A DNA stretch of 64,000 nt from Bispira polyomma. Lineage: Eukaryota. Both the position numbers and the translations under genes were made by a program. Shown piece after piece: positions 1,410-48,721 of this stretch (positions within the stretch are counted from its first letter, which is position 1; the number at the start of each line of letters is the position of its first letter). The notes beneath the pieces were generated by a model. The model did not search any database, was not told the origin of the DNA, and saw nothing but the letters and a program-made list of their open reading frames with translations. The DNA is taken from positions 3,224,001 through 3,288,000 of the forward strand of contig OZ287761.1 of assembly GCA_965649765.1 (NCBI GenBank), written 5' to 3'.

Positions 1410-1907
1410 TCACTCCTCCTCGGAACCACTACTGTCGCTATCAGAATCTTCAGTGTCACTCTCGGTTTCACTTTCACTTTCAGAACTTGATGCCTCATCC
1501 TCCTCCGCTCCTTTAGCTACCTTGGTTTCACTTTCTTCCTCCTTCACCAACTCCTGGGTTTTACTTTCTTCCTCCTTTACCGACTCCTTGGTTTCACTTT
1601 CTTCCTCCTTCACAGAGGCTGCCTCCTTCTCCTCCTCCTCCTCCTCACTTTCAGTTTCACTTTCTTCATCCTTGGTTTCACTTTCTTCCTTTTCCACCAT
1701 TTCACTTTCTTCTTTTTCCACCGTTTCATTTTCTTCCTTTTCCACCGTTTCACTTTCTTCCTTCTCCACCAACTCCTTGGTTTCACTTTCTCTCTCCTCC
1801 TCCTTCTCATTCTCCTCCTCCTCCTCTTCCTCACTTTCAGTTTCACTTTCAGATTCACTCTTTGTTACAGTGACTTCCTCTTCCTGTTGGCTTTCTTGCG
1901 TTTCTTC
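1410..1907 (-). CDS. Ig-protein gene last coding exon (VEKEESET repeats, TGA stop)
   Basis: ATTTTAG acceptor, 166 codons to TGA; AATAAA candidates downstream near 1183 and 781. Confidence 0.7.
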   Translation of the reverse strand, partial: EETQESQQEEEVTVTKSESESETESEEEEEEENEKEEERESETKELVEKEESETVEKEENETVEKEESEMVEKEESETKDEESETESEEEEEEKEAASVKEEESETKESVKEEESKTQELVKEEESETKVAKGAEEDEASSSESESETESDTEDSDSDSSGSEEE

Positions 1908-4900
1908 CTAAAATTTGACACATTTTATTTCCTTTATCAAACTTTTAAAAATCTTTTCAAACAGAAATTTGTACACACACCCCGCCATGAAAAAATTTCT
2001 AATTCTGTTAAATCTTCTGCAATATTAGTTTTGTTTTCATGACTGAGAAATGCAAATATATCAACAATCGAAATCTTTGAAAATACCTCCACCAAAGAAA
2101 TTACCTGATTTATATTTGATAATTTGGGCCACAGCACATCAAGGCCTGTGCCACCTTCAACCCATTAACTACATGAAAGTAAAAAGTTAACCACACAAAA
2201 GTAAAAACTTAACTACACGAAAATAAAAAGTGCAACCAAAATGACCCCAGAGTGAAACATTAAGACAGACAAGTGCACGAAAATACAGTAGAACCTCTAA
2301 TATTCAAACTTCTATCATAATACCAATATTCAATTTTACAACCTAATTTAACAAATTTTTGGGGGGGGATTCCTGTTACTATATTGCCTCTTCCAAACAA
2401 AAACAAAAATCATGCTCTCCCACCATGTTCAGATAATAGAGGTTCCACTGTACGTAGTGAGGCCAGGGCCAGCGTATTCACAAACTGTCTTAGTCTTAAC
2501 TTAGTCTTAAGTTTAACATTTTGGTCTTTGATTTTGGGCTGAAAATATTAAGATTTTGGTCTTAGTCCCAGTGACAGAAAGAAAAGATATTTGGTTAGTG
2601 TTAACTTTACTCTTAAATACAAAAATTATCAGCAGTCAAGTCTTAAATATTTTACACATCAAAGATAAGCATTGGACTAAGTTAGGACTAAGGCATTATG
2701 CAAATACAGCCCCTGATTTTTCTAAATTAGAAGTAGACATTCACATTCAAGTATAGTAACCAACTCACCGCTGTCAACTGTATTTCCGTGGTAACTTGCT
2801 CCTCCTCGACAATCGTCACTTCAACTTCCTGTTCAGTGTCCACTGCGGCTTCCCCTTTCCCAATCTCTGGCTCACTGACCGTCACAGTGACCTCTCCTTT
2901 ACCCGTCTCTGTGGTGACCGTCTTCGCCTCCTCCCCCTCCCCATCTTCCTCTTCACTACTGGACTCTTCACTGGACGAATCCTCTTCACTCGAAGATTCT
3001 TCTTCACTGGACGATTCCTGATCATATAAAAAATACAACATAAGATAGAATTATACACGGGTGACCATAATTGTGTCCATTTTGCTTTGTTGATTATTTA
3101 TAACACAAAATATTATCTATATGAAAAAGCTAATTTTACATTAAATCAATAATTTCATTGTTGTAACATTAGAACATCAGTGCCAACATTTAATTACCCT
3201 ACCTAAAAAATGGCCTTAAAAAGGGAGGACACAATTTATACCACAAAGTATTTTACGGTAAAAGCTGCTACCTGTAAAATTGAATATTTGGATAACAAAA
3301 GTTTGTAGACTAAAAGCTTTTGGATAAGGAGTTAATATAACAGAGGTGACCAAGCTCCTCTTCACTACATAATTAGAATTATACCACAATGTGTAATCCC
3401 ATACACCCCCACATCCTTCCTTGCGACCTTGCTATGTCATGATTGAATCCCTGATTCAGCTGTTGCGCTTTAGAAGATCCCTAGCATCAATAAAGCACAT
3501 TAAAAAAACATAATAACTATAATAATGTATTGGAATAACATGCTTCACATAAAATAGAATATTTGGATAACTATATATAAGTCACTGACCTCCTCTTCAC
3601 TATCTCCCTGCTCTTCCTTCCTCTCAGTGGTCTCCTTCACCTCGTCCCCTTCTTTGACCTTGGTGGTGACCTCTGTGACCTTGGAGACGACCTTCTCCTC
3701 CCCGTCCTCGGACACCTCTATCACCCGCTGCACCTTGGTGACCGTTCTGACTTCCGTCACCGTGGCACCTTCAGGGATGTCTGGGTGGAGCTCTACTGAC
3801 TGACTGCTGTCTGGTAATACCATCACCTCGGTAACCTGTGTAAACACAGCAATCTGGTAATAGCATCACCTCGGTAACCTGTGTGAAGACAGCAATCTGG
3901 TAATACCATGACCTCAGTAACCTATATAAAGACAGCAATCTGGTAATACCATCACCTCGGTAACCTGGGTAATACCATCACCTTGGTAACCTGTGTAAAG
4001 ATAGGAGTTTGGCAATAGCATCACCTCGGTAACCTGTGTAAAGACAGGAACCTTGGTAACCTGTGTAAGACATAAATCTTGAATTTAGTTAGGTTTGAAC
4101 CTTTTAGGTTGCTTTTAACAGCTTAGATCATATCACGACATACAGAATCAACGGTGGAAAAAACCAGTACCAAAGCACTGTAAACCACCGATCTATGGCA
4201 AGTACCTCACAAACTTTCCCACATGAAGGACAGAATAAAGATTCAAACCCACACTGGTGAGAGGCCAGTGATATCTCTGAGTTGATATTTACTACAGTAT
4301 TTAGAATTTAGTTGTGTTTTACGTCGTTTTCAACAGCTTAGGTCATATCACCATGGCCAGATTCAATGACGGAGGAAAACAGTGATAAAGCGGTGTAAAC
4401 AACTGACCTACGGTAAGTACCTGGCAAACTTTTACACTTGAAAGAATGAACAGGACCTGTTACATGTGTAAAAACATGGAGAAATGACTCGGTAGAAAAG
4501 ACTTTAAATATGTATGACACGCACAATCCCTCAAAACACATTTGTGTAATAATAATATTGAAGATTTAAACAGAATCTTCTTCTCACAGGAAGTCCGATC
4601 CAATCCCTCCCTACCTCCATATCTTCGCCGGTCTCTTCCTTTCGGTCCGTCGTTTCTTTGACCTCGCCCCCTTCTTTCACGGTTTTCGTGACCTCTGTGA
4701 CCCTGGACACAGTCTTCTCCCCGTCCGCTCCCACCTCCACCACCTTCCTGACCTTGGTGACCTGTTTGACCTCAATGACCTCTTCCTCCGTGTCCACAGA
4801 AGCCTCGGAGTGGTCGTCGCCGAGAGACTCGGAGTACTCAGTCCAGGATTCCTCCTCCGTGACGATACCGCGGTCACTTACCACTGACTCGGCACGAGCT

Positions 4901-7900
4901 ATATGTGTTAAAATACACAAGGGGCTTTGTAAATTGAGTAAACTGGAAAACCGTTCGTGACTGTCAGAAAGTAACTGCCATAAACTGATGGCAATAGGTT
5001 CTAGAAAGCTAAAGTCATTAAATCAAACTCTAGTTCCAGAATTAAATATCGACCTCCTGTATTATTTTTTTTAAACAGGGGAGTCTGCTGTTCTAACAGT
5101 TTCCTACTGCGAGGAACTGAAGGAAAATAGAATAATATTTTAGGGGTGTCGACTGCTTGCCGATAGACATAGGACCCACAGGAGTCGAAACGGTTAAGCT
5201 GAGTTTGGTTTAACGTCGCGTGTCAACACGTCTTGTTGTCGTATTACGACAGACAGATCACTGGTAAAGAAAACTCAGTAGGTGGTCATAGTTTTCTTCT
5301 CCGCAAACCCACCAGCCTTCAGCAAGTCTACTGCCAACTCTACCACACAATTGGATGGTTAAATTATTAAGGTTTTAGCATGTGGTAAAACAGAAGGTTT
5401 ACAGGAGGTTTAAACACTACAGGGTTAAACATTGGTAACGGGAAACATTCTGAGGTCAATGAAAAAGCTCATATTCAATTAACACTAAAGAAATGGCTTT
5501 TTGGTATGCATGAACCTGGAGGCCTTTGTACAGAGGCAGTCTCTCTCTATACAGGTGGTCTCTCAAGTAGGTTTGACTGAAAACATTATAGACTGTATTT
5601 ATATATTAAAGACTAACATTCCTCCTTGCTGGCTGGTTCTGTGTTCACTCTCAGTGTAAACTGTTCTGTGACCTCGACATTCAGTAAAGCGTCCTCTTCT
5701 AGTACAGGGGACACAGGCTGTACCTCAATGGTTACCTCCTCACTTTCCTGGTCATCCTGGGGTTGGTCTAAAGAGAAGGGAATGGTCACCTCCTCATCCT
5801 GTTGGTTATCCTGGAGCTGGTCTAAAGATTAATGGTCAGCTTACTTAATGAGTGGACAGCGTACTTAATAACTGGTCATCTAATGGGCATGTTACTACAG
5901 GAGACAGAGGCTGAACCTCAATGGTCACCTCCTGTTGGTCATCCTGGGGCTGGTCTAAAGAGTAATGGTCAGCTTACTTAATAACTGGTCATGTAATAGA
6001 CATGTTACTACAACAGACTCCGGCTGTACCTCAATGGTCACCTACTCACCCTCCTGGTCATCCTGGGGCTGGTCTAAAAAGTAATGGTCAGCTTACTTAA
6101 TGACTGGTCAGCTTACTTAATGACTGGTGAACTTACCAATAACTGGTCATGGAATGGTCAATTTACTTAAGAACTGAATCGTCATCTTACACAATAACTG
6201 GTGATGTAATAGTCATCTTACACAATAACTGGTGATGTAATAGTCATCTTACACAATAACTGGTGATGTAATAGTCATCTTACACAATAACTGGTGATGT
6301 AATAGTCATCTTAAGGAGATGTCAGTCTCAGTCTGTACTTAAAAGGTCTTCTATTGGATCTGGTCCAAAGAGTAATGATTGGTCACTTTAATGTAATGGT
6401 CATTCTACCTAATAATCAGCTGTACTTCCATGGTGACCTCCTCCCCCCTCCCGCCTTGGGCTGTCCAAAGATTATAGACTGGTCAGAGTACTGAACAACT
6501 GGTCAGCTTAATTTATAAGGCCATGTATTCCTGCCAAATACCAATGTTGTCATCTTACTTAATTAGACTATATTTATTTGGTAAAGGTCTGATCTATCTT
6601 AAGGTATTCATGATACAGTTTTGAACCTCAAGGGACCAGGAGAAACTACCCTTTACTTCAAGCAGGAATTTCACTTAACAGGGGTAGATTTCGAAAAAGA
6701 AAAAGCTGTTTATGGGGACCACGCACACATAGGAAAGAGTCACCGCAATCAGAGAGCTACAATTCCTTAAAACGGTTCAGGAGGTGGTAATAGAAAGAAA
6801 ACTCACAGCAAAACTAACTCGGTTTGGAAACTTGGTAACTAAGTGGAAATGGCATGTGGTACTATAGGTCACGTCAAGTTTAAACATTATCTTAACGTTG
6901 GACAGAATAAAGACTACTTTACAGCAGACATTTTTTTGTCATCTTCAATTTTTAAATTTGGTTTTACATCGGTTTCAATGGCTTAGCTTATATGACGATG
7001 GCCAGATTTAATGGTGGAAGAAACCAGTGCTAAAGCCACTGTGTAAACCACCAGCAAGTACCTGACAAACCTTCCTACATGAAGGAACAAACAGGATTCA
7101 AACCCACATTGGCAAGAGGTCTTTAAAACGCTGTCATATGTAAGAGCATTACAGTTAGTGATTTAATTCTGTACAGATTTAGGTACTAATAAAGTATGAA
7201 ACCCTTTTTTTTAATAATTCAGAGCTATTTTGCAATTCACACTGGTGGCAAATAGGATCAGGACAAAATGTTCATCATATAAAGAGGCTTTCACTATAAT
7301 TTAGTATGTAGTTTGAGTTTAACGTTGATTTCAACACACATTTGTGTTCTATCACAACAGGTAGTTCAGTGATGGAGAATCTTAAAGCAGGGTATTTGGA
7401 CAAGCCATTATGCTTTGCAAACCACCGGCCTTCAGCAAGTCTACTGCCAACTTTTCTTACATAGAGGCAAGAGTCGAGATTCTAACCCACAACAGAAGTG
7501 GGAGGCAAGTGTGTTACCACATCACCACAGAGGCCCATGTTTACTATTCGGAAGTTTTAATGCAAATTAATTAAAACTTACGACCCCAACTGAGAACTGA
7601 AGGACATTTTTTAGGATAATAGGTACAGATAGCTGGAGTCACTGAAACACACACTACAGACTACGACCTACAGCATTCAACAACAGCCTCAGGTATATTC
7701 TTTTAAACTGAAGATTCTATTGCACTAAAAATTTGCTATTGGGAAGAACTAAAGCTCGAAAAAATACTATTTTTTTGGGGGGGGTATTGACTGCATGCCA
7801 GCAGACATAGGATCTGGGAGTAAGAAATGCTGTCGACTGCTAGTCAACAATCTAGGGGTTGAAAGGGTTAAGATATTGTCATTTCTACTCCTGTTGATCT

Positions 7901-10900
7901 TCTCACCTTCAGAAACAGCATCAGTCTTGTCCAAACCTTTGTCCACCGCTTCAGTGGTGTTCAGTTCAAGCCTCGACTCTATGGTCTCTGTGACCTCGGA
8001 GAAAGCCTGGTCTACTATTGCTGTGGCGACGGCTTCTTCAGAAGACACTTGACTGGTCTCAATGGTGACTACGGCTTCTTCAGAAGACACTTGACTGGCT
8101 TCCATAGTGACTACGGCTTCTTCAGAAGACACTTGACTGGTTTCCAGGGTGACTATGGCTTCTTCAGAAGACACTTGACTGGCTTCCATGGTGATTGTTC
8201 CATCAGTTTCACTTTGACCTGCCTCCACAACTTCTATGGTTGTTTCTGCAGGAAGACTTGCCTCCGCTGTAACAGCTTCTTCAACCAGTACAGCTTCTTC
8301 TGTGGCTGTTCCATCAGCTTCACTCACTTCAACAGCTAAATCTACTTCAATAGCTTCTTCAACAGTTTCCTTGGTTATTACGTCAGCTTCCTTGGCAGCT
8401 ACATCAGCTGAAACTTCAGGTTCAACAGTTTCCTCGTCTGTTACATCAGACTCACTGTCACTGGCTTCCTGTTCAACCACATCTTCACTAGAAACAATCT
8501 CCTTAGCAATTTTTTCAGAAGTACTTTCTATGGTTTCCGTGACAACTGTTTTTTCAGCTGACTCAGCAGTACTGGTTACGGTCATGACAGTTTCTTCAGA
8601 GGACGCGTTGCTCGATTCCGCTGCCACGGTTACTATGGCTGTTCCATCGGCTGTTTCTGCTTCTTTGTTCATTTGGTCTGCCTCCCCCTCTTGTGCATCC
8701 ACTGCTGTCATGGTTACGGTAGAAGGCTGGACAAGGACTAACTCTATAGAGGACATCTTCCTCAGTGGTTTCCTATCTCTGGCGGCCTTCATCTCCACTT
8801 CATCTAAAACAGGTTCAAACGTCACCTCAGTGCCGTTGACTGTTGTCGCTTCTGTCTTCGATTCCTCCATCTTTACTACTTGTTCTACTGTTTCTTCATT
8901 TTCCTTTATATCCACTGCGGCTGTAGTAGTTTCTACCTTTGCCGTCATCTCCACTGTACTGTCATCACCAGCTACTGCCTTGACTTCTATCGATGCTGCT
9001 TCCTCTTTTTTTTCCTCTCCCGATAATTTAATCTCTAGCTCTTCCACCGAGATTTTGGCCTCCACTTTCTCCTTCTCTACGGCTTGTATCACCTCTTCTT
9101 CTACCGGAGCTTGATCTTCTTCCTCTGATACTTTAACCTCTTCCTCTAACACTTTGACCTCTTCCTCAACTTTGACCTCCTACAGATGTGAAGATCAAGT
9201 TGAAAATGTAATGCATATGTTTATTGAATGTGAGCAGGTTAAAAATATTTTGCTTAAATGAGAAAATTGTATATCGGAAAAAAAATATCAAAAAGATACC
9301 ACTGTATGAAGTGCCACTGAGATGTGGCTAGTCAGAAATTACCAACTTTCTATTATTTAAAGCAACTCAAATGTTTGTATGTGTTGGATGAATCTAGATC
9401 TATATATGTGTATTATATGTGTAAATGTAAATCTATATATATTATTGCTACTGTAAACATACATGTAAATTAAGATTGGTATGTACAGAAGTGGTTATAA
9501 ATAAACAAAAAAAAATAAACTTTGACCTCCTCCTCTTCCTCCTCTTCAGTTGGCTGTTTCTTCAATGGCACCGGTTTTTCTGGTCTATCACTCACGGATG
9601 CTGTAATGGCATCTTCCACGACCTCATCATTTTCTACCTCATGTTCAACCTCTTCTGGCTTCTCCACTTCATTCGAAACTACGACAGCTGCTTCTTCCTC
9701 CTCTTCCTCCTCTGTTTCACTCTCGGAGGACTCTTCTGGGGTTTCAAAGGTGACCGTCTTCTTAGGTTCCTCTTTTTCTGAGGCCTGTATTCCTGCCACA
9801 GCACCGACTAACCAGTCCTTGCTCTCAGCTGGTTTTTCAGCTTCAACAACTTCTACCTTAGTTTGAGCAACTTCAGGGGGCACTTCAACTACAGGGGTCA
9901 CTTCAACTTTGGGCGTAACTGGCTTTTCCTCTTGTGGTTCTGGCTCAGGAGAGACACCTGTTAGGTTAGGTCATATCACAACGGCCAGATTTAATGGTGG
10001 AAGAAACTAGTGCTGAAGCCACTGTGTAAACCACAGTCCTGCGGCAAGTACCCTGACAAACTTTCCCACATGAAGCAGCGAACAGGATTCAAACCCATAT
10101 TGGTCAGAGGTCATTGATTGTAAAGCAGGCGCTTCTGACCACTAGGTCACCGGAGGCCCAAAACAGCCTTAACAGACAATTTATAATGTTTGAAGTTCGC
10201 ACAGACTTGATGCATCAGTCAATGTATCGAAAAACCAATTTCAACTAAATAAAAGTGGTGATACATACCTATACTTGGCTATTTTTCTATGTTTTCTACT
10301 GTGTAACTTCAAATTAAGGTGTAACATGAACAAAACCTCATACTGTCATCTATCTCAAATATTTATATTTTTCCTTGGGAACAATTTGATTTGGGGCACA
10401 TACTGAATTTTGGCAAATAGGAAATAAAATATACATGATCGAGTCCCAAAGCCTAGACCGTCAACTATTCGTCACAGCTTTACAAATCAGCCAGGTGTCA
10501 TTTTAGTATTTTACTTTCATAAACAAAAACAGTGACACGGATTTTGAAAAGGAAGAAACTGTGCCAAGTAAAAAAACTAAACAAAACTTAATTGTTAAAT
10601 CTTACCTTTCTGTTTTTCCGCAGCCTTTTCCGTTTCACTGGTGACGCTCACTTCTCCGTATTTGTCGACTTTCACCGTTCTTATATCCCCATCCTTAACC
10701 ACTAGAGACGATACACAAAACAAAAACAACCACATCAGTTAATGACACGGAGGATTGATAGATTTACTGGGGTTTATAAGATCGCTTAAACCACATTTTA
10801 TGGGGCATATCACAACGGGCAGTTTTACTGGTGAGGAAAACCAGTGCTGAACTGCTGTAAGCCACCAACCTACGGCAAGTACCAGACAAATTTTCCACAC

Positions 10901-13900
10901 GAACAAACAAACGGGATTGGTGAGAGGCCAGTGATTGTGAGTCAAACGGGCTTCTAACCACTAGGCCACCGTGGTCCCCACACAAAATCAAAATCACTTC
11001 ATGGCTCACTGTTATTAAAGGGTCAAACCTAGGCACGAGGCAATATATACAATTACTGTCGTTTTTTAAATACAGCTAAACACCTTTATGTCAAACCGCA
11101 AGGGACCAGAACAAATACCTCTTACTGAAGCACACCAGTTGGTCAAGATTTTGGCACTGTAAATCACCAGGCATTGGCAGGTAACTGCCAACTTTTCCAC
11201 ATAAAGCCGCGGATGATTTGGATACTTCAGATTTGAGCTTGATATCTTTCAAGAATACAACCACAAGTACCAATGACAAATAAAATGAAAGGACTGACTA
11301 ACTCAACTACCTGAGTCATTATTTTGTCTTTAGGTCACTTTGAATAGTTTAAGTATTGTTACATGGGTGGCGCTGGCTTCGAACTACCCTTGGCCTCGGC
11401 CATCTCGAAATTTACGACCAATTGCGACCATTGATTTTACTGGGAAATCAGCACCACCCGTGCGCCATGTATAAACAGTATATAAGGAGAAGGAATTGAC
11501 ACCATCTTTCACACGGTCAGCTCTGGCCTGCAGCAAAATACTCACGTAAAACTCACGTTAGTCACATGATCGGGTAAGTTGGCCTCGCTCGTTTTAGTGA
11601 CAGTAACACATGTCAGTTGATCACATGACCCTCTTACCTTTCCTAGTAAAGCTGACATTAGTCACATGATCGGGTATATTCGCCTCGTTCACTATACACT
11701 CGTTTTAGTGACAGTAACACAGGTCAGTTAATCACATGACCATCTTGCCTTTCCTGGTAAGCTGACGTCAGTCACATGATCGGGTATATTCGCCTCGTTC
11801 ACTATACACCCGTTTTAGTGACAGTAACACATGTCAGTTAATCACATGACCCTCTTACCTTTCCTAGTAAAGCTGACATTGGTCACATGATCGGGTACAT
11901 TTGCCTCGTTCACCATACACTCGTTTTAGTGACAGTAACACATGTCAGTTAATGACATGACCATCTTACCTTTCCTAGTAAAGCTGACGTTGGTCACATG
12001 ATCAGGTACATTTGCCTCACTCACTGTACACTTGACCTCCAGGTTTTCTCCCTCTTTTTCTTCTATTTCAAGTGGCAGTTTCTTCACAAACCTGGGAGCT
12101 GTCATTATAAAGCAGACAGGAACGTTAAATTCTGTCAATTCTTGTACAGTTTTTATACTGCTTAATCCACGGCTTAGTGGTTTTCAGCCAATGATTTTCT
12201 ATAAGTTGATTTGGCACTCCAAACCTCTGGAACCAATGATATGTGAGATATAGGACTTTTAAGTTTGACCATCCGCATTTGACCTTGAACGAGGGGCCCA
12301 AGGTCAAATCGGACTACATCAAAAGATTCTCAGCCCTTGAGTTCATATAGGTTGGTTTCACATTAAAAACCTGTTTGACCAAAATAAGTGAGATATAAGC
12401 AGTTTTAGGTTTGGCCATCCCTGTTTGATCTTAAAGGAGAGAGCCAAGGCAAATGTGAGCACATCAAAAGATTCCCTGCTTATGATTTCCTATAGGTTGG
12501 TTTCAGATCCCAAACCTGTAGGACCAATATTAAGCGAGATATAGGCACTTTTAAGTTTGGCCACCCTCATTTGACCTTGAACGAGCAGCCCAAGGTCAAA
12601 TCGGACCACATCAAAAGATTCCAAACCCATGATTTCCTATAGGTTTGTTTCAGATCCCAAACCTCTAGGACCATTTTTAAATGAGATATAGTTTGGCCAA
12701 AATCGGTCACTTGGGGTACTTTGGCACTCTGTCGATGACCTTGAATAAGGAGATTCAAGGTCAAATGCCTGCATGCTTATAAAGGACATATATATCCATT
12801 AAACATATCACCTGTAAAGAGATTCAACCTTCTACAGCTGAGAAACAGACACAGTAAAAAGCCTGATTAGTTTCAAAGAAACGCCCTCAGAGGCCATCTT
12901 GTTTGTCAAAATGAGGCCAAAATTATTCTCAGGCAAGGTTTTGTAATAAAGAACATTTCCTATAAATTTCAGGAACCTAGGTGTAAAAGTTTTCCCAGCA
13001 GAGCAGTAATGGAAAAATCTCTACACACACTGACGCGGCGTCGGCGGCGTAACAATGACTAATCCACAGTATCCACCGGAGGTACTCCTCCGGTGGATAC
13101 AATAAATGCATAAAGATATTATATTGATTTAGAATTTTCTAAATTTCATGTAATTTCATGTAATTAAAAGCATAAAGATCCAATTTAACTGAAAAAACTG
13201 CAAGTAATCCAAAACTGTTTCACCAACTCAGTTATATAAACGACTATAACCTTGAGGACACTTACCCATATTCCCTTGTTCTTTGTCAAAGTTAATGTCG
13301 TACTCGTAATCTGGCATTTGCACAAAGGACCTCTGGATTTCAATTCCATCCCTAAAAAAACCAAGAACAGATTCAGAAACATAAATACATCTTTTAAACT
13401 TGTAACACACAGTAATTTACTTCATAAAATATATAAAACTAAATTAAACTACTCAAATAAAATCTATGTGCAGCCTTCAGTTAATTTGGGGTTCTTGTGA
13501 CTTTCAACAGTCGAGCCAGGGTCCTTCTGATCCCCAGGCGAACTTCGTAACCACTAAGTCACGAGAGGTCACAACAAGTGACCCTCTGATCACCAGAATA
13601 ACTTTCTAACCACTAACCCACAGAAGACCACAAGTACATACACAAATAAGCCTGGAAAAAATTAAATCAATACAAAAGAAAACTAGAACTCCGTTTCTGG
13701 GTAATTTAGCTGGTGTAGCATAACCTCTATTATCTGAACTTCTATTCTTCAAATATTAAATTTTATAAACTCAGTTTCAGTTTCCAAATTTGGGTTTTCC
13801 TATATGCTTCGTACTAAAAAGCATCATCTTCTATTTTAAGAGCCTTTTAAGAATCTAAATTTGCCACTGTATCTAAAATTCGCCACCTCAAAAATGTTGT

Positions 13901-16900
13901 GTTTTTGGTTGAATTGGGTAATATTTGCTAAAATTGACATTTTTGTGACTATTATGCATTCCTTACCTAAAATCCAGTTATTTTTTGCCAGTCGTTAATG
14001 ATTCAGCTCAAATTTTAGGGGTGGCGAATTTCAGATAGAGTGGCCAATTTTAGATTCCTTACTCTATCTAAAGAAAATCTTGCTGTCCCAAAGATGTTCA
14101 GATAATAGAGGTTTACTCCTGTATCAGGAACGACAGAAAAACTAAACTAGATTAATTAGGTAACACACTATATGACTTACTCGTCAAACTCCCTAGGTGG
14201 CAGCACATTCACCCAACAGAAACATGTGGCCCTTCCCGCCTTGTTCTCAGCGACGAGGATGAATCTGCCCGCGTCTTGTTTCAGTGTAGATTTAATCTCC
14301 AGGAAGTGTTTATCTTTGTCAATTCCCACACGATGGCGCTCGTTGTATTGTAACTCACGGTACGGTTCTTTTAGCCAGGTGACTGAGTGTAAAAAAGTAG
14401 AGGGAATATGAAAAGATAGATCTGATTAGTTCAATTTATCACCACACGATGGCGTTCATTGTACTGTAACTCACGGTATGTTCTTTTAGCCAGGTGACTA
14501 AGCGTAAAAAATAGGCAGAATATGACAAGGTAGATCTGATTAGTCCACTTGATTACCACACGATAGGGGCTTATTGTATTTTAGCCCAAGGTAGGTTTCT
14601 TTTAACCAGGTCACTGATATATATTTTTGGCCAATTATCAAAGACCAACCTCTTAAGTTAAGACGAAGACCTTCTGTGAATACGGTTCATGATTAGTTCA
14701 CATGGCCGAGGCTTTCTTTTGAGGCCAACCGACATTTGAACAAAGCTTGGCTTATGTAAACAGGGCCAGGTGTAAAAGAGTAATTAAGGCCTTCTGTTTT
14801 GAATTTGAATTTAGTTGGGTTTGGGTTGGGTTTTACTCTGCTTTGAACAGCTTAAGTCGTATCAAGACAGCCAGATTGAATGTCAGAAGAAACCAGTGCT
14901 GAAGCCACTGTGTAAACCACCGACCTTCAGAAATACCTGATAAAACTTCCCTAGATGGAGGAATGAACAGGATTCAAACCCACATTGGTGAGAGGTCAGT
15001 GATTGTGAAGCTAAGGCTTTTAACCACTAGACCACCGTGGCCTTGGGACAATGAGGATCTAGTTAGTAAAACACAACAAATTACCTCTTGGCTTGGGGTC
15101 TCCATCCACTATACACTGTAAGCTGAGAGGATCACCCTCCGGTACTGATAAGGTGGTTGGCATAGCCTTCACAAACCAGGGGGCGGTTCCTTCAATACCT
15201 GTGTACGACATGACAGATTATACAGTTAACATTATATCACCCTCCAGTACTGGTAAGGTTGTTGCCATAGCCTTCACAAACCAGGGGGCTGTTCCTTCAA
15301 TACCTGTGTATGACATGACAGATTATACAGTTAACATTATATCACCCTCCAGTACTGGTAAGGTTGTTGTCATAGCCTTCACAAACCAGGGGGCTGTTCC
15401 TTCAATACCTGTGTACGACATGACAGATTATACAGTAAACATTATATCTCCCTCCGGTACTGGTAAGGTTGTTAGCATAGCCTTCACAAACCAGGGGGCT
15501 GTTCCTTCAATACCTATGTATGACATGATGTCACCCTTTGGTAATTAGTAAAGTTGTAAGGGAAGCTTTTCCTACTGCAAGGAACTGAAGAAAAATAAAA
15601 TAATATTATTGGGGGCTCCTTGCAGACAACCTAGGGGTCGAAATGGTAAATGTCAAATTAATAGGTTTCTTTAGGGGCCAAGCTTTCTATCTACAATAAA
15701 ACAGCGGCCTATACTACCTACAACCCTTCACACCTTGTGTCCCAATTTATACATGGTGACTTGTTAAATCTTGCTTATCTTGCATATGGTAAAAAATACA
15801 CATACAATGTACACAGAAGGTATTCAATGACAGTTTACTGCTTACATTTGTCAACAGTAATAATGCTATTCACATTTGTAGTTCACGTGTACAAAAAAAA
15901 ACAGGTGTGAACAACAGACATAGCTAGGCTCTGCTGAAAATAATAAACAGACTTGCTTCTGTTGGGATTAGAACCTCGGTTCTAACGGATCTTGAGATTA
16001 ATAGCCCAGTACACTAACAGTTGAGCCAAAGGCGAAACCCCCCAAACCCGAGTTTTTAATGCGCTGATATACACTGATATTACACAGGAATACAGAAGCA
16101 GTCTACTTGTCCAAACTCAGTTCATCCAAAAATCTGCATTACCAATAAACCGATCTCCCTAAATTTTTACATCATTTAGGAAACTCCCTGGATGATAAGG
16201 TAGTATTTTACAGGAATGTATTCTATATTCAAAAGCACTGAGTATAGGTTAATTGTAAAATAATGTATTAACTCTTACCTGGTGTGTCAAACTTGACAAT
16301 GACAGGAGACGTGTCAGTAGAAATAGCTTTGACAGGAGGGACGGTTCCTTCACTGGTGCCTGAAATACATACAAAACACCATCAGAGATGACAAACTGTC
16401 ATATTTAATCATACTAGAGTGTTGACAGAAAATTTGGCCCCTATACACAAGAAGAGTATTCCCCAGATAAAGTTGAGACTACAAGTGTACAGGGAACAAA
16501 ATTTACATGACGCACAATGACCTACGTCTCCTATTTTAAGCTGAAGGTCGAAACTCTGTCAAAGGTAAAAATCATGCTGACTCATGATGCTTAACATAAA
16601 AAACTTTAAACAAGATAAGCAGGTTCCTTTAACGAGTGGTTCTTGAGTATGGACCAGACAAGCTGTTTAAGGTTAGATAGAGACCAGAGAAGGTCACATT
16701 TAAGGTCACAATGAGGTTACACTAAGGTCTCACTTGGGTCGCAATTATGTCAACTCGAGGTCACACTGAGGTCACATCAACGTCACCCTGAAAGCCAACT
16801 AAGGTAACACTAATTTCACACTAATATAACATCAAGGTCACACTGAGGTCGCACTATGGTCACAATTAAGTCACAATTAAGTCACACTGAAGTAAAACTA

Positions 16901-19900
16901 CGGTCCCACTAAGATCAAACTACGGTAACAACGAGGTCACCCTGAGGTCACACTAAGGTCAAAATGAGTCACACTAAGGTCACAATGAGGTAAAACTAGG
17001 GTCATACTGATATCTCACTGAGGTCATAAACTGAGATCTTGCCGACACTAGACATCAATAGACACTATTGGCTGTATTTGGAAAACATTATGAACCAGTA
17101 TATCTAACATTTTCTAAAATAACCCCTAAAATAGCAGCCTGCACTCGTGCTTTTTCCCGCCATATTTTCAGCTTTACAGTACAGTATATACAGCAGAACC
17201 TCTATTATCTGAACATGTTGTGGGCAGTCCAAGATTTTGTTTGGATATTAGAAGAGGCATTTGACGTACTAAACCATGGAAAAAACATAACTCAGGGAGA
17301 GTAAAATTAAATATTTAGATGACAGAAGTTTAGATAATAGGGGCTTCACTCTCCATCCCATTTCTACTAACCTTTAACACGTAGTGTCGCCGTACTCTTC
17401 GTCTTGCCCTCACAGTTTTCCGCCACACAGAAGTAGAGGCCCGCGTCGCCAGGTTCCACCTGATTGATGACCAGCTTACAGTGGCCTTGTTCATCAGAGT
17501 ACATCTTGATACGACCTGAGGGCTCCAGACTGATGTTATCTCTCAGCCTGTTACCACGGGAACACACAGACACCATGATAGATACAAGTACATCTTGATA
17601 CGATCTGAGGGCTCTAGACTGATGTTATCTCTCAGCCTGTTACCACGGGAACACACAGACAACATGATAGATACAAGTACATCTTGATACGATCTGAAGG
17701 CTCTAGGCTGATGTTATCTCTCAGCCTGTTACCACGGAAACATAGAGACAACATGATAGATAAAAGTACATCTTGATGCAATCTGAGGGCTCGAGAGTGG
17801 TGTTATCTCTTAGACCATGGGAGATCACAGATGGGTCTGCAGTTTAACTTTCAATGTATCCATCTGTGATCTCCCATGGTCTAGTTATGATGGTACCTTG
17901 AGGCTGTGGTATGAGTAACCGTTCATGTCATCTGGATCCGGCCATTACCAGGATCAACAAAAAGCTTTGAAATTTTCCTGGTTTAACTTACATTATACCC
18001 ATCTGAATACTAACACTTAACTGAATACTGAACACTTAAACCCTAGAGCATGGGAGAGCACACAAAAAAAATTTTGGGAGTTGAACCAGACACCCTCCGA
18101 TCACCAGATCAAACCCTCAACCACTAGATGATGGGAGACAACATACAGCTATAATAAGAGTTGAACCAAGGACCTTTTGAGGACTAGGTTAAACCTTTTA
18201 ACCACTAGACCACCAACAGTTAGCTTCTTACCAGTTACCTACTTCACCTTCTTAGTTCTAGATTATGTGGGGTTCACACTCTGATGGTATGGAAAGACAG
18301 TAACACTTGTTATCAAAATTTCCCCCCGTTTCTGACTATTTCCTAGTATTTGCTTGTCACTACTGTAACTCTTACATGGTAGTAATCATCTGTTTCCATT
18401 TGTGAAATATATCTGGACAATTTTCACTCCCTATCTTTCCCCTACATGGATCAGCCAGTATAACATGCGGAAAGACAAGTTACAATACCTTCTGGTACCA
18501 CCTATCACACCGCCAATGTGTGAACGGGGCATAAATAAACTATTAACCTATTCTAATAGAACAACCATGATACCTTACCATCTAAATGTGGGCATGGGTC
18601 TTGCTGAGACTTGAGCCTCAAAGGTCGCCTTCTGTCCCAGTTGTGCAGAGGTATTGGAAGGTTCTAGAGTGAAACTTGGGGCTCTGGTCCCTTTGGTACT
18701 GTCTTCAGTGTCATCTTGGAACTCTAGAGACAGGTAGAAAAGGTTGATAATAACAGAGGTATTGGAATGTTCTAGTTGTTCTTGTTCCTTCTGTACTGAC
18801 CTCAGTGTCATCTTTGAACTCTAGACCAGGTAGAAAAAGTTTGTATTAACGGAGGTATGAAAAGGACCTACAGTGAACAATCTATGCCATTGTGCATTCA
18901 AATCTTGGCTGTAAGGCATGTATGTGGGAAAGTTGGCAGTAAACTTGCTGAAGGCCGGTGGTTTGCAGAGACCAGAAAACATTGACCAACTACACTGCTT
19001 TGTTGTGATAGTATACAAGATGTGTTTAAAGAGATGTTAAACATATCTAAGCATGGGCCCATATTTAGTCTGTTCTGTATATCTTTATGTATAAGAACGA
19101 TGTCTAAATTCTGCTCACATATTAGAGTTCCTCATTGAAAGCTCTACTCAAATTAATGGTACCCAGGTGGTGCTGTCTTCGGCCTACCATTGGTAATGGT
19201 CACCCAGTAAAGTTAGTACAAAATTAATGGAAATCTGAGATAGCCGAATCCAAGGGTAGGCCGAAGCCAGCGTTACCTGTGTAACATTTCTAGGTTGTCA
19301 TCACTTTGAGAGCCAAACCAAAAAATAAAGGTTATACTATATGTCCCTCACATATATAAAGTACTAGTCAGTTTTCCTAAAACGTCGAAGGTGATTTATT
19401 TTCTACAACAAACTTTAGACATAATTCTACAAAAACCAAGTTATTACATAATTAAGGTTTAATAAAATCCCTTTCACATGTAGAAAGACGTGTCAGTTAA
19501 TTACCTAAGACTTCCAAGGTGGCGCTAGTGGTCGCCTCGCCTTCAGTGTTGATGATTTTTGCTGTGTACACTGCCGAGTCTTCCTTCTTGAGGTTAAGAA
19601 TCTCTAGTGCAAGGAGACCATAGTCATTCTGAAGGTGGAAAAACTTATATACAGTAAAACCTACAATAGTGAATACCTCCATAGTCATTTTGAAAGTAGA
19701 ACAACTTATATACAGTAAAACCCTCCACATAGTCATTCTGAATTTGAATTTAGTTTGTTTTTACATTCGCTTTCAACAGCTTAGGTCAGATCACTAGTGC
19801 TGAATCACTGGAAGGGACTAGGCTTAACTCTAGCACAAAAGTATACTGATTAAAGCCTAAGACTTGGCTAAGTCCCTTAGTGAGTACAGGCCCAGACAAA

Positions 19901-25900: not shown

Positions 25901-28900
25901 AAAGCGTTAACGCCTCTTCTATTTTATGAATCTTCTATTATCCAAACAAAATCTTCCTCTCCCAGTATCATACTGGGAGAGGGAGATACTGACAGTATGT
26001 TCCGATAACAACTGTTTCACTGTACAGTAGAACCTCTATTATCCGACCCTCTAATTATCTGAATAATCAATTTTACAGACTTAATTTCACTCTTTCAAAA
26101 TTAGTTTTTTTGCTAGTGTTTAATGCTAAAATACCACTTCTATTTTACAGAAAATAAAGGTTCTACTGTACTTCTATTTATGCCGAGTGTCCTGTTTAAC
26201 TCAACAACCCCACATTTCTCGATCTAGAGTCTATACCAACTTATCATGTCTGACTCTTTGAGGCAACTGTAAATTACACTCTATAAACAGTACCTACACA
26301 CTCATTTGCCGGGACTAAATGTTTAATAATATGCAACATCTATATAAAGACCACAGGTCGGTCATTAAAGACCACTTTTCCGGATTCCCTTGGGTGGTCT
26401 TGATATATAAGTTTATTGTACCCACAAACATCTTAAACATAAGAATAAAATAGCCTCATAAATATACACCACTCACAAACATCTTGTACTTGTCCCCCTC
26501 GCTGATGGTTCCGTTTCCCTTCATCCAGATGACGCTGGGCATGTTGGGTATGGCGGCCACTGTACAACTGAAGCGAGCGCTCTGGCCCTCTAAAGCCCTC
26601 CTCGACCTCATGGGGTTACTGAACTGGGGCCTGTCGTCTATACGCTTCACCTTGGGGATAGGGGGAAGGTCGGGCAGTGGACCGATGTCCAGACCCGCCG
26701 AGGAGGGGACCTTAGGGCCGCGATCCTTGTACTGGGATCGGTCGTAGATACTCTCGTAAGGAAGACCTGACATAAATAAATAGACAGATTGATTGGGGTT
26801 TAATGTCGAATAATTCACAGAGTGTTAATCAACAAACAAAATGTGACTATTTTAATAAAATACCCGTTAAAATACCCTGGGCTGGTTTTCACACAGAGAC
26901 CTTATTCCTAAATTTTTGCATCCAAAAATGGTTTCACTCTCCCAAATTGATGTTTTAAACTAAAAATCCTCTTCCATTTGATGAACCTTTTATTATCATA
27001 ACAAAATCTTTCTCTCCAAACATGTTTAGATAAAAGAGGTCTCTATTGTTAATCAAGCCTCACTATAGCATACTGACTACCAGCCAGCGGTCACACACCT
27101 CCCTTAGTCATAAATCTCAAGATTTTGGCTGAAAAGGTTAAATATTTTGGTCTGTAGTCCCAGTAAGAAAAGATCTTTGATTAGTGATAATTTTGCTCCT
27201 AACACGCACCAAGACTAAAATCTTTGCACCTTAGAATTTGTTACAACAAAAATAAGTGCTAAAATTTAAACAGTAGGCAGTCTTCAATATTTTAAGACAT
27301 TAATGTTATAACTAAGTTGAGACTAGTGCCATGTGGCTCTACTGACCTCTCTTGAGGTAAATCGACTTGATGTACCCCGGGGGCGTGAGCTGTGGGTGGA
27401 CTCTTTTATTTTATGAACCTTCCCTTACAATAAGAGAATCTTTCTCCCTCAACATGTTCAGATAATAGAGGTTATACTGTATTATGGCTGCACTCGTATA
27501 ATAGAGAGGCCAGCTAGTGTGGCTACACTGACCTCCCTTGAGGTAGATAGCCTTGATGTACCCGGGGGTGAGGTGTGGGTGGACGTGGTTGTACTTGTCC
27601 CTCTTGTCCATGTGCTCCCTGGCGATATTATCCTCAAACCCGTTCTGACCAAGGAGGTAGCTCATATCTCTGAAAGAAAACAAAACATATACATAGCATT
27701 TATTACAAGATGGACATTTTTATTCACCCGTCAGCCAGCAATAGACGGTATAATATGTTATGGTATCGAGAAAAGTATATTTATTCATTTGTGATGTAAT
27801 CCAGTTGTTGTAAAAATGTCATTTGTGATGTCATCAAAGTGTGTCAAAGTATTATCCCTCAGTACAGTGGAATAACTCTCCATCGGTGGCAAAGGGGTTA
27901 AGTGAAGTGTTTGTTGTAAATGAATCAATCAGAAAATAAGTTACCAAAAGGTTTCATTAAAAAAGTCATTCATTACCTCGGATTAAAATATTTAAAGCAT
28001 ATCATCGAAACCTTTGTCTTTTGTGAGGGATAATGTGACCTTAAAAAAGGTCAAAGGAACAACACCAATGACATCACTATACAGTGGAGTCACAGTTACA
28101 CTTAGGTTAGGACTGGTTTCCAGTGAAATTATTTAAATACACTGGACACATAGATACTTTTACAAAGGTGACCACACCATATGATGCTATATATACTATA
28201 TGTGTTATATGTGTTGTTAAACGATCTATATATTGTATAGATCGTTTAACAACACGGTCACGCTAACCGTCCACAAACAAAGTTTTCATAGTACTTTTGG
28301 CCTCATTTATCAAAACTGAATGCAGCACAACTTTTGTTTTCCTTTTCTCGTTATCCACTTCTTGTTATAACTTTTGTTTCAACCTTTCTCATAAATTTCA
28401 AAATCTGCTGAGAAATAAGACAGTTGAGAGAACAATAACCCATAGCTCACCTATAGCCGTATATACATATAAATGTGAATAGGGCACGGTCCAGTTGTGT
28501 TTTGGTATATGCATACATAAATGGTAAAACCTTAATACTACTACAAAACTATTAAACGCTGTGGTAATAGAAGGAAAAGAACTACTTTTAATGTGGCATA
28601 TGAATATATAATGGTAAACCTTAAGGAAGAACTACTTTCAATGTGGCATATGAATACATAATGGTAAACCTTAAAGAAGAACTACTTTCAATGTGGCATA
28701 TGAATACATAAAGGTAAACCTTAAGGAAAAACTACTTTTAATATGGCGTATGGATACATAATGGTCAACCTTAAGGAAGAACTACTTTCAATATGGCCAG
28801 ACAGGTGACATGTCCAGTGAACAACAGGAGCTGAGCCTATACTTTTGGTTTACCTTTTCTCATGATCTTTCTCCACTTCCTGTCGTATTTTGGCCTCCAG

Positions 28901-30418: not shown

Positions 30419-31809
30419 TTTGGACCAGCTCTGAGGTGAAGAATCGACACTTCTGGAAGGCACTGTTCTGAAATAGCCCACACACAGTGTCTCTTCTTTT
30501 TGAAAATTTATTGGAAGGGATTGTAAAAATTCTGTTTTACTAAAATACATACAGGGGGGGATAGCGATTCGTGGTGGACAGCGTTCACCATAAATATGGT
30601 TATTACACCTAATCACTGTATAAAATTAATTTTAAAGGAATTATTTTTCCATTATAATATTCATATAACATACACATGCCTATGCCACAAATATATATTT
30701 TCTGCCAAAATAAATTTTAAATGAATTTAACATACCAACACAACAAAATAAACAGTGGTACTGCTTAAAATGTGAGGTTGAGGATGAGACTGTCGTTCAG
30801 ATGATTTATTGGACTGTATTGCTGATTGTTTTCTATTTCTCATATTATGCATCATGTAGATAAACTACTTTACATCATCACTATTATTTTGAATAAAGCT
30901 TATAAGTAATATTTTAATGCAAATATTTACCATTGCTTGAAAATGGCGAAATACTGTCGACTTTGTAATCAATTTTTACCCAGTCCCTTTGGTTACTAAA
31001 TTGTGGTTAAAACTCGTCACAAATACCTTCATGTAACTGGGTACAAGTCTAATATGCATGCAATAAAAGGACCTTCAAAAATTACCAGTGAGTTGCCTTA
31101 ATATTATTTCCTTTTTCTTACATTTGTCAAATTTCCGTGAATAATGGGCGAACCGCTGCCCCTCCCCTCCCCTCCCCCCTGTATTGTATTTTGTTAGAGT
31201 GAGATTAGAGTAGATCAGTTGAGCCTAACTATAATGGTCTATTTTATTCAGTTAGATATAACACAGAAGACTATGTCATATATTAGTTACGTATATGATG
31301 TATTTGTGTTGAGGTTGTAATAAAACTGGGGCCATATTCTGCAAACCACTAAAGCTCAACTCACACTCAACTCAAATCTAAAGTGCACCTATATAGCTCT
31401 TTATTCTAAAATAACTGCTAAGGAAACACATCAGGGGCAGTATTCACAAAGATTCTTCTTCTTAGAGTTACTCTTATTCTTGGAATTACTCTTCTTTAAA
31501 TAATTCTTTTTTGTACATTTGGTGGTTTCTTGATCTGAAAGATTTTTTTTAAGAATTAAACCCAACAATGGTGCCAATTGTTGTTCCATTCTTAGATTTT
31601 AGCCTCATTTTAAATTTTTTTTCTTAAAAAAAGTAAAAAAATATGAAAAAAAAAAAATTTGAAAAATGTTATTCTTAGAATATTCTTAGTCAAAGAAAAA
31701 TTCTAAAAAAATTAAGAATAACTGTGCAATTCTAAGAATAAGAATCTTTGTGAATACAGCCCCTGGCGAGAATAAACCTAGGTACAGTAGGATTATATAT
31801 TTGAATATA

Positions 31810-42590: not shown

Positions 42591-48721
<6,131 letters not shown>

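What the first reader, a model, noticed from the sequence alone, without database searches (positions are those of the whole stretch)
9168..9531. Candidate intron gain: LINE inserted in a coding exon, with the TSD supplying both splice sites
Seen: a 336-bp 5'-truncated LINE end (zinc-knuckle remnant, A-rich tail, antisense to the gene) lies between exact 14-bp repeats AACTTTGACCTCCT. On the gene strand this repeat reads AGGAG|GTCAAAGTT, an AG|GT proto-splice site. Removing the insert plus one repeat restores a continuous frame (...EEEEVKVEEEVKVLEEEVKV...). The upstream repeat copy gives a phase-0 donor (GAG|GTCAAA, 9526). The antisense LINE gives a pyrimidine tract ending TCTGTAG|GAG|, a NAGNAG acceptor: the second AG gives perfect excision (350-nt intron) and the first adds one Glu (347 nt). 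Retention reaches an in-frame TAA at 9470-9472, while about 900 codons downstream remain open. Established: TSD-mediated intron gain at AGGT is a long-standing model, and the cases I know are mostly DNA transposons (Introners). Inference: this is a retrotransposon-born intron, or a recent disruptive polymorphic allele. The donor is weak.
Basis: partly seen in the sequence, partly recalled or inferred. Interest (0 to 1): 0.85.

Follow-up and report, generated by a model that had tools for sequence, protein, structure and literature searches.

The report
Old LINE insert, probable new intron
An old fragment of a jumping gene sits inside a large coding exon of a muscle-type (Ig-domain, acidic-spring) gene, and indirect evidence suggests the cell now cuts it out as a new intron. 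No RNA data could be obtained to prove this, and transposon-born introns of this kind are already known.

Summary
A 336-nt LINE 3' end (9182-9517, + strand, antisense to the gene) lies between exact 14-nt target-site duplications, inside a 1.7-kb exon (9957-7907, minus strand).

- **The exon.** It is phase 1-1 and encodes an acidic, PEVK-like segment. I-set Ig exons lie upstream on the same strand.
The copy also carries a private ~290-nt internal deletion. It is not recent: it belongs to the family's old subfamily, with about 9-12% decay and a stop codon in its own ORF remnant. It appears homozygous in two DNA samples.
- **Support for splicing.** The host frame is still open on both sides (0 stops, against 50 and 61 in the other two frames). 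The TSDs are perfect. The 62 nt next to the proposed acceptor carry 1 change, where about 6.6 are expected. Together these point to continued selection, so the insert is probably removed as a ~347-nt phase-0 intron.
- **Against.** The TSD donor GAG|GTCAAA is weak. Other in-frame cryptic donors exist. Skipping the whole exon would also keep the frame. No RNA run or orthologue was available.

Verdict: a plausible single LINE-born intron, a new member of a known kind, and unproven.

The parts
9182..9517 (+). 5'-truncated, internally deleted 3' end of a non-LTR retrotransposon (LINE), antisense to the host gene; the proposed intron body
   Evidence: It matches more than 200 candidate sites in the own genome. 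Copies are 5'-truncated at different points. The family encodes RVT_1 and zf-RVT. The copy sits in the old subfamily with an end branch of 0.12.
9182..9283 (+). Remnant of the ORF2 C-terminal zinc-binding (zf-RVT, CCHC) region. It has 8 private changes, all nonsynonymous, including TTA>TGA. On the gene strand its first 62 nt form the pyrimidine-rich 3' splice-site region.
   Evidence: Alignment with 11 other copies; change positions 9208, 9244, 9245, 9247, 9251, 9260, 9269, 9275; zf-RVT hit on the homologous ORF of L037.
9283..9303 (+). Junction of a private internal deletion of about 290 nt
   Evidence: In other copies, parts 1-102 and 122-336 of the insert lie about 290 nt further apart. The junction sequence occurs only here in the genome.
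9505..9517 (+). A-rich 3' tail of the LINE copy
   Evidence: Sequence; aligned tails of other copies.
9168..9181 (.). Target-site duplication, the downstream copy on the gene strand. It supplies the G of the acceptor AG (the A could be LINE or TSD) and the first exon codons GAG GTC AAA GTT.
   Evidence: Exact 14-nt repeat; sequence.
9518..9531 (.). Target-site duplication, the upstream copy on the gene strand. It reads AGGAG|GTCAAAGTT and supplies the proposed phase-0 donor (G at 9526).
   Evidence: Exact repeat; frame; donor scores.
7907..9957 (-). Host exon, 2051 nt now and 1701 nt without the insert. Both flanking introns are phase 1. It encodes an acidic PEVK-like disordered segment (E 24%, V 16%).
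   Evidence: Acceptor ...cctaacctaacag|GTGTCT and donor GAAG|GTGAGA. The previous exon's donor at 11969 is phase 1.
9470..9472 (-). In-frame TAA that is reached if the insert is retained
   Evidence: ORF 9470..9901; sequence.
9177..9181 (-). Tandem acceptor TAG|GAG| at the LINE/TSD junction. The first AG gives a 347-nt intron and one extra Glu. The second AG gives 350 nt and exact restoration.
   Evidence: Sequence; acceptor scan.
9590..9598 (-). Alternative in-frame cryptic donor TCC|GTGAGT (G at 9595). Using it would remove 23 more codons.
   Evidence: U1 duplex -6.6 kcal/mol.

Best explanation
A LINE (a non-LTR family encoding RVT_1 and zf-RVT) inserted by target-primed reverse transcription into a 1.7-kb coding exon. 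It inserted antisense and 5'-truncated, and it made a 14-nt TSD. The exon encodes an acidic, PEVK-like disordered stretch, in a locus with several I-set Ig exons upstream on the same strand.

The insertion is old, at about 9-12% neutral decay with three indels, and it appears fixed. Because the host reading frame, the TSDs and the acceptor-proximal end of the insert have all escaped that decay, the insert is most likely removed from the mRNA as a phase-0 intron of about 347 nt.

- The 3' splice site is the pyrimidine-rich antisense LINE end plus the AG at the LINE/TSD junction.
- The 5' splice site is probably the GT inside the upstream TSD copy (GAG|GTCAAAGT). The purine-rich GAR sequence just upstream may help it. 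This would add one Glu to a poly-Glu run.

Shown: the anatomy, the age, the zygosity, the open frame and the uneven decay. Inferred: the splicing itself and which donor is used.
For: - **Exact TSDs and the LINE family:**
- **Age:** ML end branch of 0.12 within the old subfamily (99/95 support). 18 of 193 UTR sites differ from the majority of all copies, and 19 of 207 from the copy's own subfamily. There are 8 private changes, all nonsynonymous, including a stop, in the ORF2 remnant. The deletion is private.
- **Zygosity:** junction-spanning contigs are at full single-copy depth in both samples. X1 has 8160-9225 at 23.7 and 9448-9995 at 21.7, against 19.6-24.6 elsewhere. X3 has 9471-9992 at 78.1. 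A known heterozygous SNP sits at half depth.
- **The frame is kept:** 0 stops in 566 codons, against 50 and 61 in the other frames. Neutral simulation keeps the 424 downstream codons stop-free with P of 0.28, 0.13, 0.06 and 0.03 at 3, 5, 7 and 9% divergence. The indel-to-substitution ratio in this family is 0.12, so several frameshifts would also be expected.
- **Uneven decay:** 1 change in the 62 nt next to the acceptor, against 25 in the other 233 nt (Fisher P = 0.022). Other old copies show no such depletion.
- **Splice sites are in frame:**
Against: - No RNA evidence of any kind was available.
- The TSD donor has C at +3 and A at +5. Its PWM score is -1.5, against 4.4-7.1 for the gene's likely real donors. 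Its U1 duplex is -5.3 kcal/mol, against -8.3 to -9.9.
- Other in-frame donors score as well or better: 9595, 9637 and 9856, at about -6.5.
- The insert contains other acceptor-like sites and a GTATGT at 9462.
- The exon is phase 1-1, so skipping it also preserves the frame.
- The 62-nt boundary of the decay test was chosen after looking at the data.
- A perfect TSD also occurs in one other old copy, L009.
- The age estimate assumes that the private changes arose after insertion.
Confidence: 0.5

Rival explanations
1. The insert is simply retained. The message stops at the TAA (9472-9470). The gene therefore makes a C-terminally truncated protein or is degraded by nonsense-mediated decay, and the downstream open frame is a leftover.
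For: The exon has strong outer splice sites and only weak internal donors, so exon definition would favour retention. Stop-free survival by chance is not negligible if the insert is younger than estimated (P = 0.28 at 3%).
Against: At the estimated age of 9-12%, 424 open codons with no frameshift are unlikely. This reading does not explain the low decay next to the acceptor or the perfect TSDs.
Confidence: 0.2
2. The functional message skips the whole 2-kb exon, which is phase 1-1 and so keeps the frame. The insertion is tolerated because this disordered segment is optional.
For: Both flanking introns are phase 1. PEVK-like segments are typically subject to alternative splicing (general knowledge of titin-type genes).
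Against: If the exon were never translated, all 566 codons would decay. They are fully open, with a strong codon-position bias (G 57% at position 1 and 6% at position 2).
Confidence: 0.15
3. The insert is spliced out in frame, but from a cryptic donor in the upstream exon part (TCC|GTGAGT at 9595 or GAG|GTAGAA at 9637) rather than from the TSD. That would delete 23 or 37 codons.
For: These donors are phase 0 and pair slightly better with U1 (-6.6 against -5.3 kcal/mol). Their PWM scores are 0.1 against -1.5.
Against: They are also weak and lie further from the acceptor. The codons between them and the TSD are still open, although that stretch is too short to be informative.
Confidence: 0.12
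4. It is a recent, polymorphic, disruptive insertion allele that was captured by the assembly.
For: The TSDs are perfect. First-stage notes report other LINE-in-exon cases in this genome.
Against: The copy has decayed by about 10%, has three indels and belongs to the old subfamily. It is at full depth, with no break at the junctions, in two samples.
Confidence: 0.03

Closest known systems
Introners (intron-generating transposons; PMC9860276, PMC12130899)
   Same: A transposon lands in an exon and is spliced out. Splice sites may come partly or wholly from the TSD or the neighbouring exon, and a codon may be added or lost (PMC9860276). Non-LTR retrotransposon-derived families make up about 5% of the categorised introner families (PMC12130899).
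   Different: Introners are defined as families that have created many similar introns. Here there is one copy of an ordinary LINE, the copy has a private deletion, no family-wide intron generation has been shown, and splicing is unproven.
Single transposon- or retrotransposon-derived introns (reviewed in PMC11282704), such as transposon insertions spliced out of maize waxy alleles (my own recollection)
   Same: A one-off insertion into coding sequence is tolerated because cryptic sites in or beside the element allow it to be removed from the RNA.
   Different: Those cases have transcript evidence. Many of them give imperfect or partial splicing, and many are recent mutant alleles rather than old fixed ones.
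New introns flanked by short direct repeats at AGGT sites (Daphnia-type gains attributed to break repair; my own recollection)
   Same: A direct repeat containing AG|GT flanks the new intron, so one copy serves each splice site.
   Different: Here the repeat is a 14-nt TSD from target-primed reverse transcription, and the filler is an identifiable LINE tail.
Antisense LINE/SINE exonisation and cryptic splice sites in mammals (my own recollection)
   Same: The antisense strand of a retroelement provides pyrimidine tracts and AG acceptors.
   Different: In those cases the element usually adds an exon inside an existing intron. Here it would create an intron inside an exon. The acceptor comes from the antisense ORF2 end, not from the antisense poly(A) tail.

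Membership tests
Non-LTR retrotransposon (LINE) insertion made by target-primed reverse transcription | Belongs to a repeat family that encodes a reverse transcriptase | tested here: met
   Longer copies (L037) carry RVT_1 (E = 1e-12) and zf-RVT (E = 1.5e-7) directly upstream of the homologous tail.
Non-LTR retrotransposon (LINE) insertion made by target-primed reverse transcription | Shared 3' end with variable 5' truncation among copies | tested here: met
   The 5' limits of homology differ from copy to copy while the 3' ends coincide.
Non-LTR retrotransposon (LINE) insertion made by target-primed reverse transcription | A-rich 3' tail, with a target-site duplication flanking the copy | tested here: met
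   The tail is at 9505-9517. The exact 14-nt repeat was not matched by any of 100 shuffles.
Spliceosomal intron gained by transposon insertion | GT...AG boundaries whose use keeps the reading frame | tested here: met
   GT at 9526-9525 and AG at 9181-9180 give 347 nt. With the 350-nt insertion this leaves a net +3 nt.
Spliceosomal intron gained by transposon insertion | The sequence is absent from mature mRNA | not testable with these tools
   The only runs found are DNA contigs.
Spliceosomal intron gained by transposon insertion | The site is intron-less in the ancestor or in orthologues | tested here: inconclusive
   The TSD structure and the continuous frame imply an uninterrupted ancestral exon. 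No orthologue or paralogue of the exon was found.
Spliceosomal intron gained by transposon insertion | Splice signals of normal strength | tested here: not met
   The donor has a PWM score of -1.5 and a U1 duplex of -5.3 kcal/mol, against 4.4-7.1 and -8.3 to -9.9 for the gene's likely donors. The acceptor tract is moderate, at 63% pyrimidine.
Introner family | Many near-identical copies, each forming an intron in a different gene | not tested
   The genome has no annotation available here. Only this copy was examined in a genic context.

The most novel reading that the evidence does not exclude
An ordinary LINE fragment became a genuine, fixed spliceosomal intron in an animal gene. Its target-site duplication supplies both splice dinucleotides and its antisense ORF2 end supplies the 3' splice-site region. 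It has since been kept by selection for about 10% of neutral divergence. That would make it a datable, mechanistically transparent case of intron birth by retrotransposition in a metazoan.
Probability: 0.35. Interest if true: 0.6.

Novelty: new member of a known kind. Interest (0 to 1): 0.4.

Why it matters
Intron gain in animals is rare and seldom caught with its mechanism still readable. If transcripts confirm the junction, this locus would show each step:
- insertion by target-primed reverse transcription at an AGGAG|GT site;
- both splice sites taken from the TSD;
- tolerance of one extra Glu in a disordered segment;
- later constraint on the new 3' splice-site region.

It would also show that a very weak donor next to a purine-rich exon can sustain a new intron. 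If transcripts retain the insert, it is simply an old disruptive insertion in a dispensable tail. The concept itself is already established, since transposon-born introns include non-LTR-derived ones and ones whose splice sites come from the TSD.

Tried and rejected
- **RNA evidence.** The single run search returned three runs from one study, all DNA contigs with even coverage of introns and repeats. No junction could be tested. An empty-site joint would not appear among the 15 joints listed, so absence of an empty allele rests on contig depth and continuity only.
- **Orthologues.** phmmer of the 470-residue downstream piece against 1.84 billion representatives gave only two low-complexity repeat hits. 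I therefore did not spend homologous-protein searches on it.
- **Paralogue or second haplotype.** Both flanks are single copy in the genome.
- **Other libraries.** Pfam found nothing on the acidic exon pieces. Rfam found nothing in 6000-13000.
- **TSDs of other copies.** Automatic TSD detection was too crude to calibrate TSD decay.
- **Rejected: the LINE-end acceptor serving the upstream intron.** The phases do not fit, and both versions reach a TGA within four codons.
- **Rejected: the conserved 62 nt being coding in the host frame.** That stretch contains in-frame TGA and TAG.
- **Joined sequence.** The joined empty-site or spliced sequence was translated only inside scripts and was not sent to any search tool.

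Full report
**1. The observation**

The 14-mer AACTTTGACCTCCT occurs exactly twice in the 64-kb window, at 9168-9181 and 9518-9531. None of 100 shuffles gave two matches.

The 336 nt between the two copies are the 3' end of a repeat with more than 200 candidate sites in the animal's own 1.04-Gb genome.
- Copies share the 3' end and are truncated at different 5' points.
- A longer copy (L037) encodes RVT_1 and, directly upstream of the shared tail, the zinc-binding zf-RVT domain.
- The window copy begins inside that domain (…YRCEDQVENVMHMFIECEQ…) and ends in an A-rich tail.

One feature was missed. Compared with every other copy, about 290 nt are missing between positions 102 and 122 of the insert. 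That junction occurs nowhere else in the genome.

**2. The host exon**

On the minus strand the insert lies in an exon bounded by the acceptor …cctaacctaacag|GTGTCT (exon start 9957) and the strong donor GAAG|GTGAGA (last exon base 7907). Both neighbouring introns are phase 1. The preceding candidate exon ends AAG|GTAAGA at 11970, also in phase 1.

Without the insert and one TSD copy the exon is 1701 nt.
- One frame has no stop in 566 codons. The other two have 50 and 61 stops. In 2000 shuffles, even the best of the three frames always had at least 17 stops.
- Codon positions are strongly asymmetric, with G at 57% in position 1 and 6% in position 2.

It is therefore a real coding exon. It encodes an acidic, PEVK-like disordered segment (E 24%, V 16%).

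I-set immunoglobulin exons lie upstream on the same strand, at 26459-26824, 19500-19760, 17370-17624 and 14180-14425. The gene therefore looks like a titin- or palladin-style Ig protein with an acidic spring or tail. More acidic ORFs lie downstream at 1413-5828, but I could not chain them reliably.

If the insert is retained, the frame runs into TAA at 9472-9470.

**3. The insertion is old and apparently fixed**

- In an ML tree of 30 copies, the window copy sits in the older of two subfamilies (13 rows, support 99/95). That subfamily is a star-like radiation. The window copy's end branch is 0.12 substitutions per site, against 0.014-0.05 for young copies.
- It differs from the majority base at 18 of 193 well-defined UTR sites, and from its own subfamily's majority at 19 of 207.
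- In the ORF2 remnant it has 8 private changes in about 100 nt. All are nonsynonymous and one is TTA>TGA. That is the pattern of a dead copy decaying in place.
- It has three indels: the 290-nt deletion, +1 and -5.

The only public runs holding the locus are DNA contigs from two samples of one study. In both samples, contigs run straight through the LINE/flank junctions at full single-copy depth.
- X1 has 8160-9225 at depth 23.7 and 9448-9995 at 21.7.
- X3 has 9471-9992 at depth 78.1.
- A heterozygous SNP nearby sits at half depth.

The insert is therefore homozygous in both samples. One sample is probably the source of the assembly, and it is not certain that the two samples are different individuals.

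**4. What has escaped the decay**

- **The host frame.** I mutated the present 424 downstream codons at random. They stay stop-free with P of 0.28, 0.13, 0.06 and 0.03 at 3, 5, 7 and 9% divergence. The family's own indel-to-substitution ratio is 0.12, so several frameshifts would also be expected. None is seen.
- **The TSDs.** Both 14-nt copies are identical. About 3 changes would be expected in 28 nt, giving P of about 0.05. One other old copy, L009, also has a perfect TSD.
- **The end of the insert next to the proposed acceptor.** The 62 nt there carry 1 change, against 25 in the remaining 233 aligned nt (Fisher P = 0.022; Poisson P = 0.01). Other old copies show no such depletion. The boundary was chosen after looking at the data; with an a-priori 50-nt region I estimate P of about 0.04. 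This stretch is not coding in the host frame, because it contains in-frame TGA and TAG.

These three points are what one expects if the exon is still translated on both sides and the 3' end of the insert serves as a branch-point, pyrimidine-tract and AG region.

**5. The splice signals**

*Acceptor.* The sequence …AACTTGATCTTCACATCTGTAG|GAG| has 63% pyrimidines. The AG is formed at the LINE/TSD junction. The second AG is a GAG, which from general knowledge of tandem acceptors is rarely used. The likely product is therefore the 347-nt intron with one extra Glu, not exact restoration.

*Donor.* GAG|GTCAAAGT has C at +3 and A at +5.

| Site | PWM score | U1 duplex (kcal/mol) |
|---|---|---|
| TSD donor, G at 9526 | -1.5 | -5.3, in a bulged register |
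| This gene's likely real donors | 4.4 to 7.1 | -8.3 to -9.9 |
| In-frame, upstream of the TAA: 9595 TCC\|GTGAGT | 0.1 | -6.6 |
| In-frame, upstream of the TAA: 9637 GAG\|GTAGAA | 0.1 | -6.6 |
| In-frame, upstream of the TAA: 9856 AAG\|GTAGAA | 1.0 | -6.5 |
| Inside the insert, after the TAA: 9462 CAT\|GTATGT | 2.4 | -1.9 |

The PWM uses metazoan frequencies that I recalled from memory.

The run GAAGAGGAGGAAGAGGAGGAG just upstream of the TSD donor is a classical purine-rich enhancer motif (general knowledge). It could compensate for the weak donor.

**6. Mechanism and rivals**

*Best reading (0.5).* A LINE inserted by target-primed reverse transcription at an AGGAG|GT site in a disordered-region exon. 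It has since been removed as a phase-0 intron ending at the junction AG, most likely starting at the TSD's GT.

*Rivals:*
- Retention with truncation or nonsense-mediated decay (0.2).
- Skipping of the whole phase 1-1 exon (0.15). The intact frame of the exon argues against this.
- In-frame removal from an upstream cryptic donor (0.12).
- A recent polymorphic allele (0.03).

**7. Comparison with what is known**

Transposon-born introns are established. In Introner families, splice sites can be recruited from the element, the TSD or the neighbouring exon, and codons can be added or lost (PMC9860276). About 5% of categorised introner families derive from non-LTR retrotransposons (PMC12130899). 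[quoted passage not shown]

This locus would be a single-copy, datable animal example. It is not a new kind, and it is not shown to be an Introner family.

**8. Limits**

- No RNA data were available.
- No orthologue or paralogue of the exon was found.
- Earlier notes of this scan call the animal a fan worm and list other LINE-in-exon candidates in the same genome. I did not verify either point.
- The joined sequence was used only inside scripts and was not sent to any search tool.

Noticed in passing
window 9966-10150 (also 6901-7700, 10701-11500, 12101-12500): A very high-copy repeat (summed word depth in the tens of thousands to hundreds of thousands) ends at 9966. That is only about 8 nt upstream of the host exon's acceptor, so the branch-point and pyrimidine region of that older intron may itself be repeat-derived. 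Rfam finds no family there.
   Followed up: partly
window 8010-8195 (-): The exon contains about four tandem 14-residue units (…ASQVSSEEAVVTxE…). These were the only part that matched anything in the 1.84-billion-protein library, and both hits were low-complexity repeats.
   Followed up: partly
window 46472-46657 (-): An ORF piece reads like ribosomal protein S26 (…[40 protein letters not shown]…). This is recognised by eye only.
   Followed up: no
window 8301-9100: Run X3 shows no contig over this unique exon stretch, although it holds 82% of the sampled words of 7767-9901. This is probably the tool's record filter, but it is unexplained.
   Followed up: no
L017 (G000:C3:86505643-86508855) and L018 (G000:C3:86629401-86632608): These two LINE copies, 124 kb apart, share homology beyond the element's 3' end (about 80% over 830 nt). 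They look like a segmental duplication rather than independent insertions.
   Followed up: no
window 28853-30625 (-): A 591-codon open frame rich in Ser, Arg and Tyr, with no Pfam hit, lies upstream of the Ig exons on the same strand. It may be a large N-terminal exon of the same gene.
   Followed up: partly
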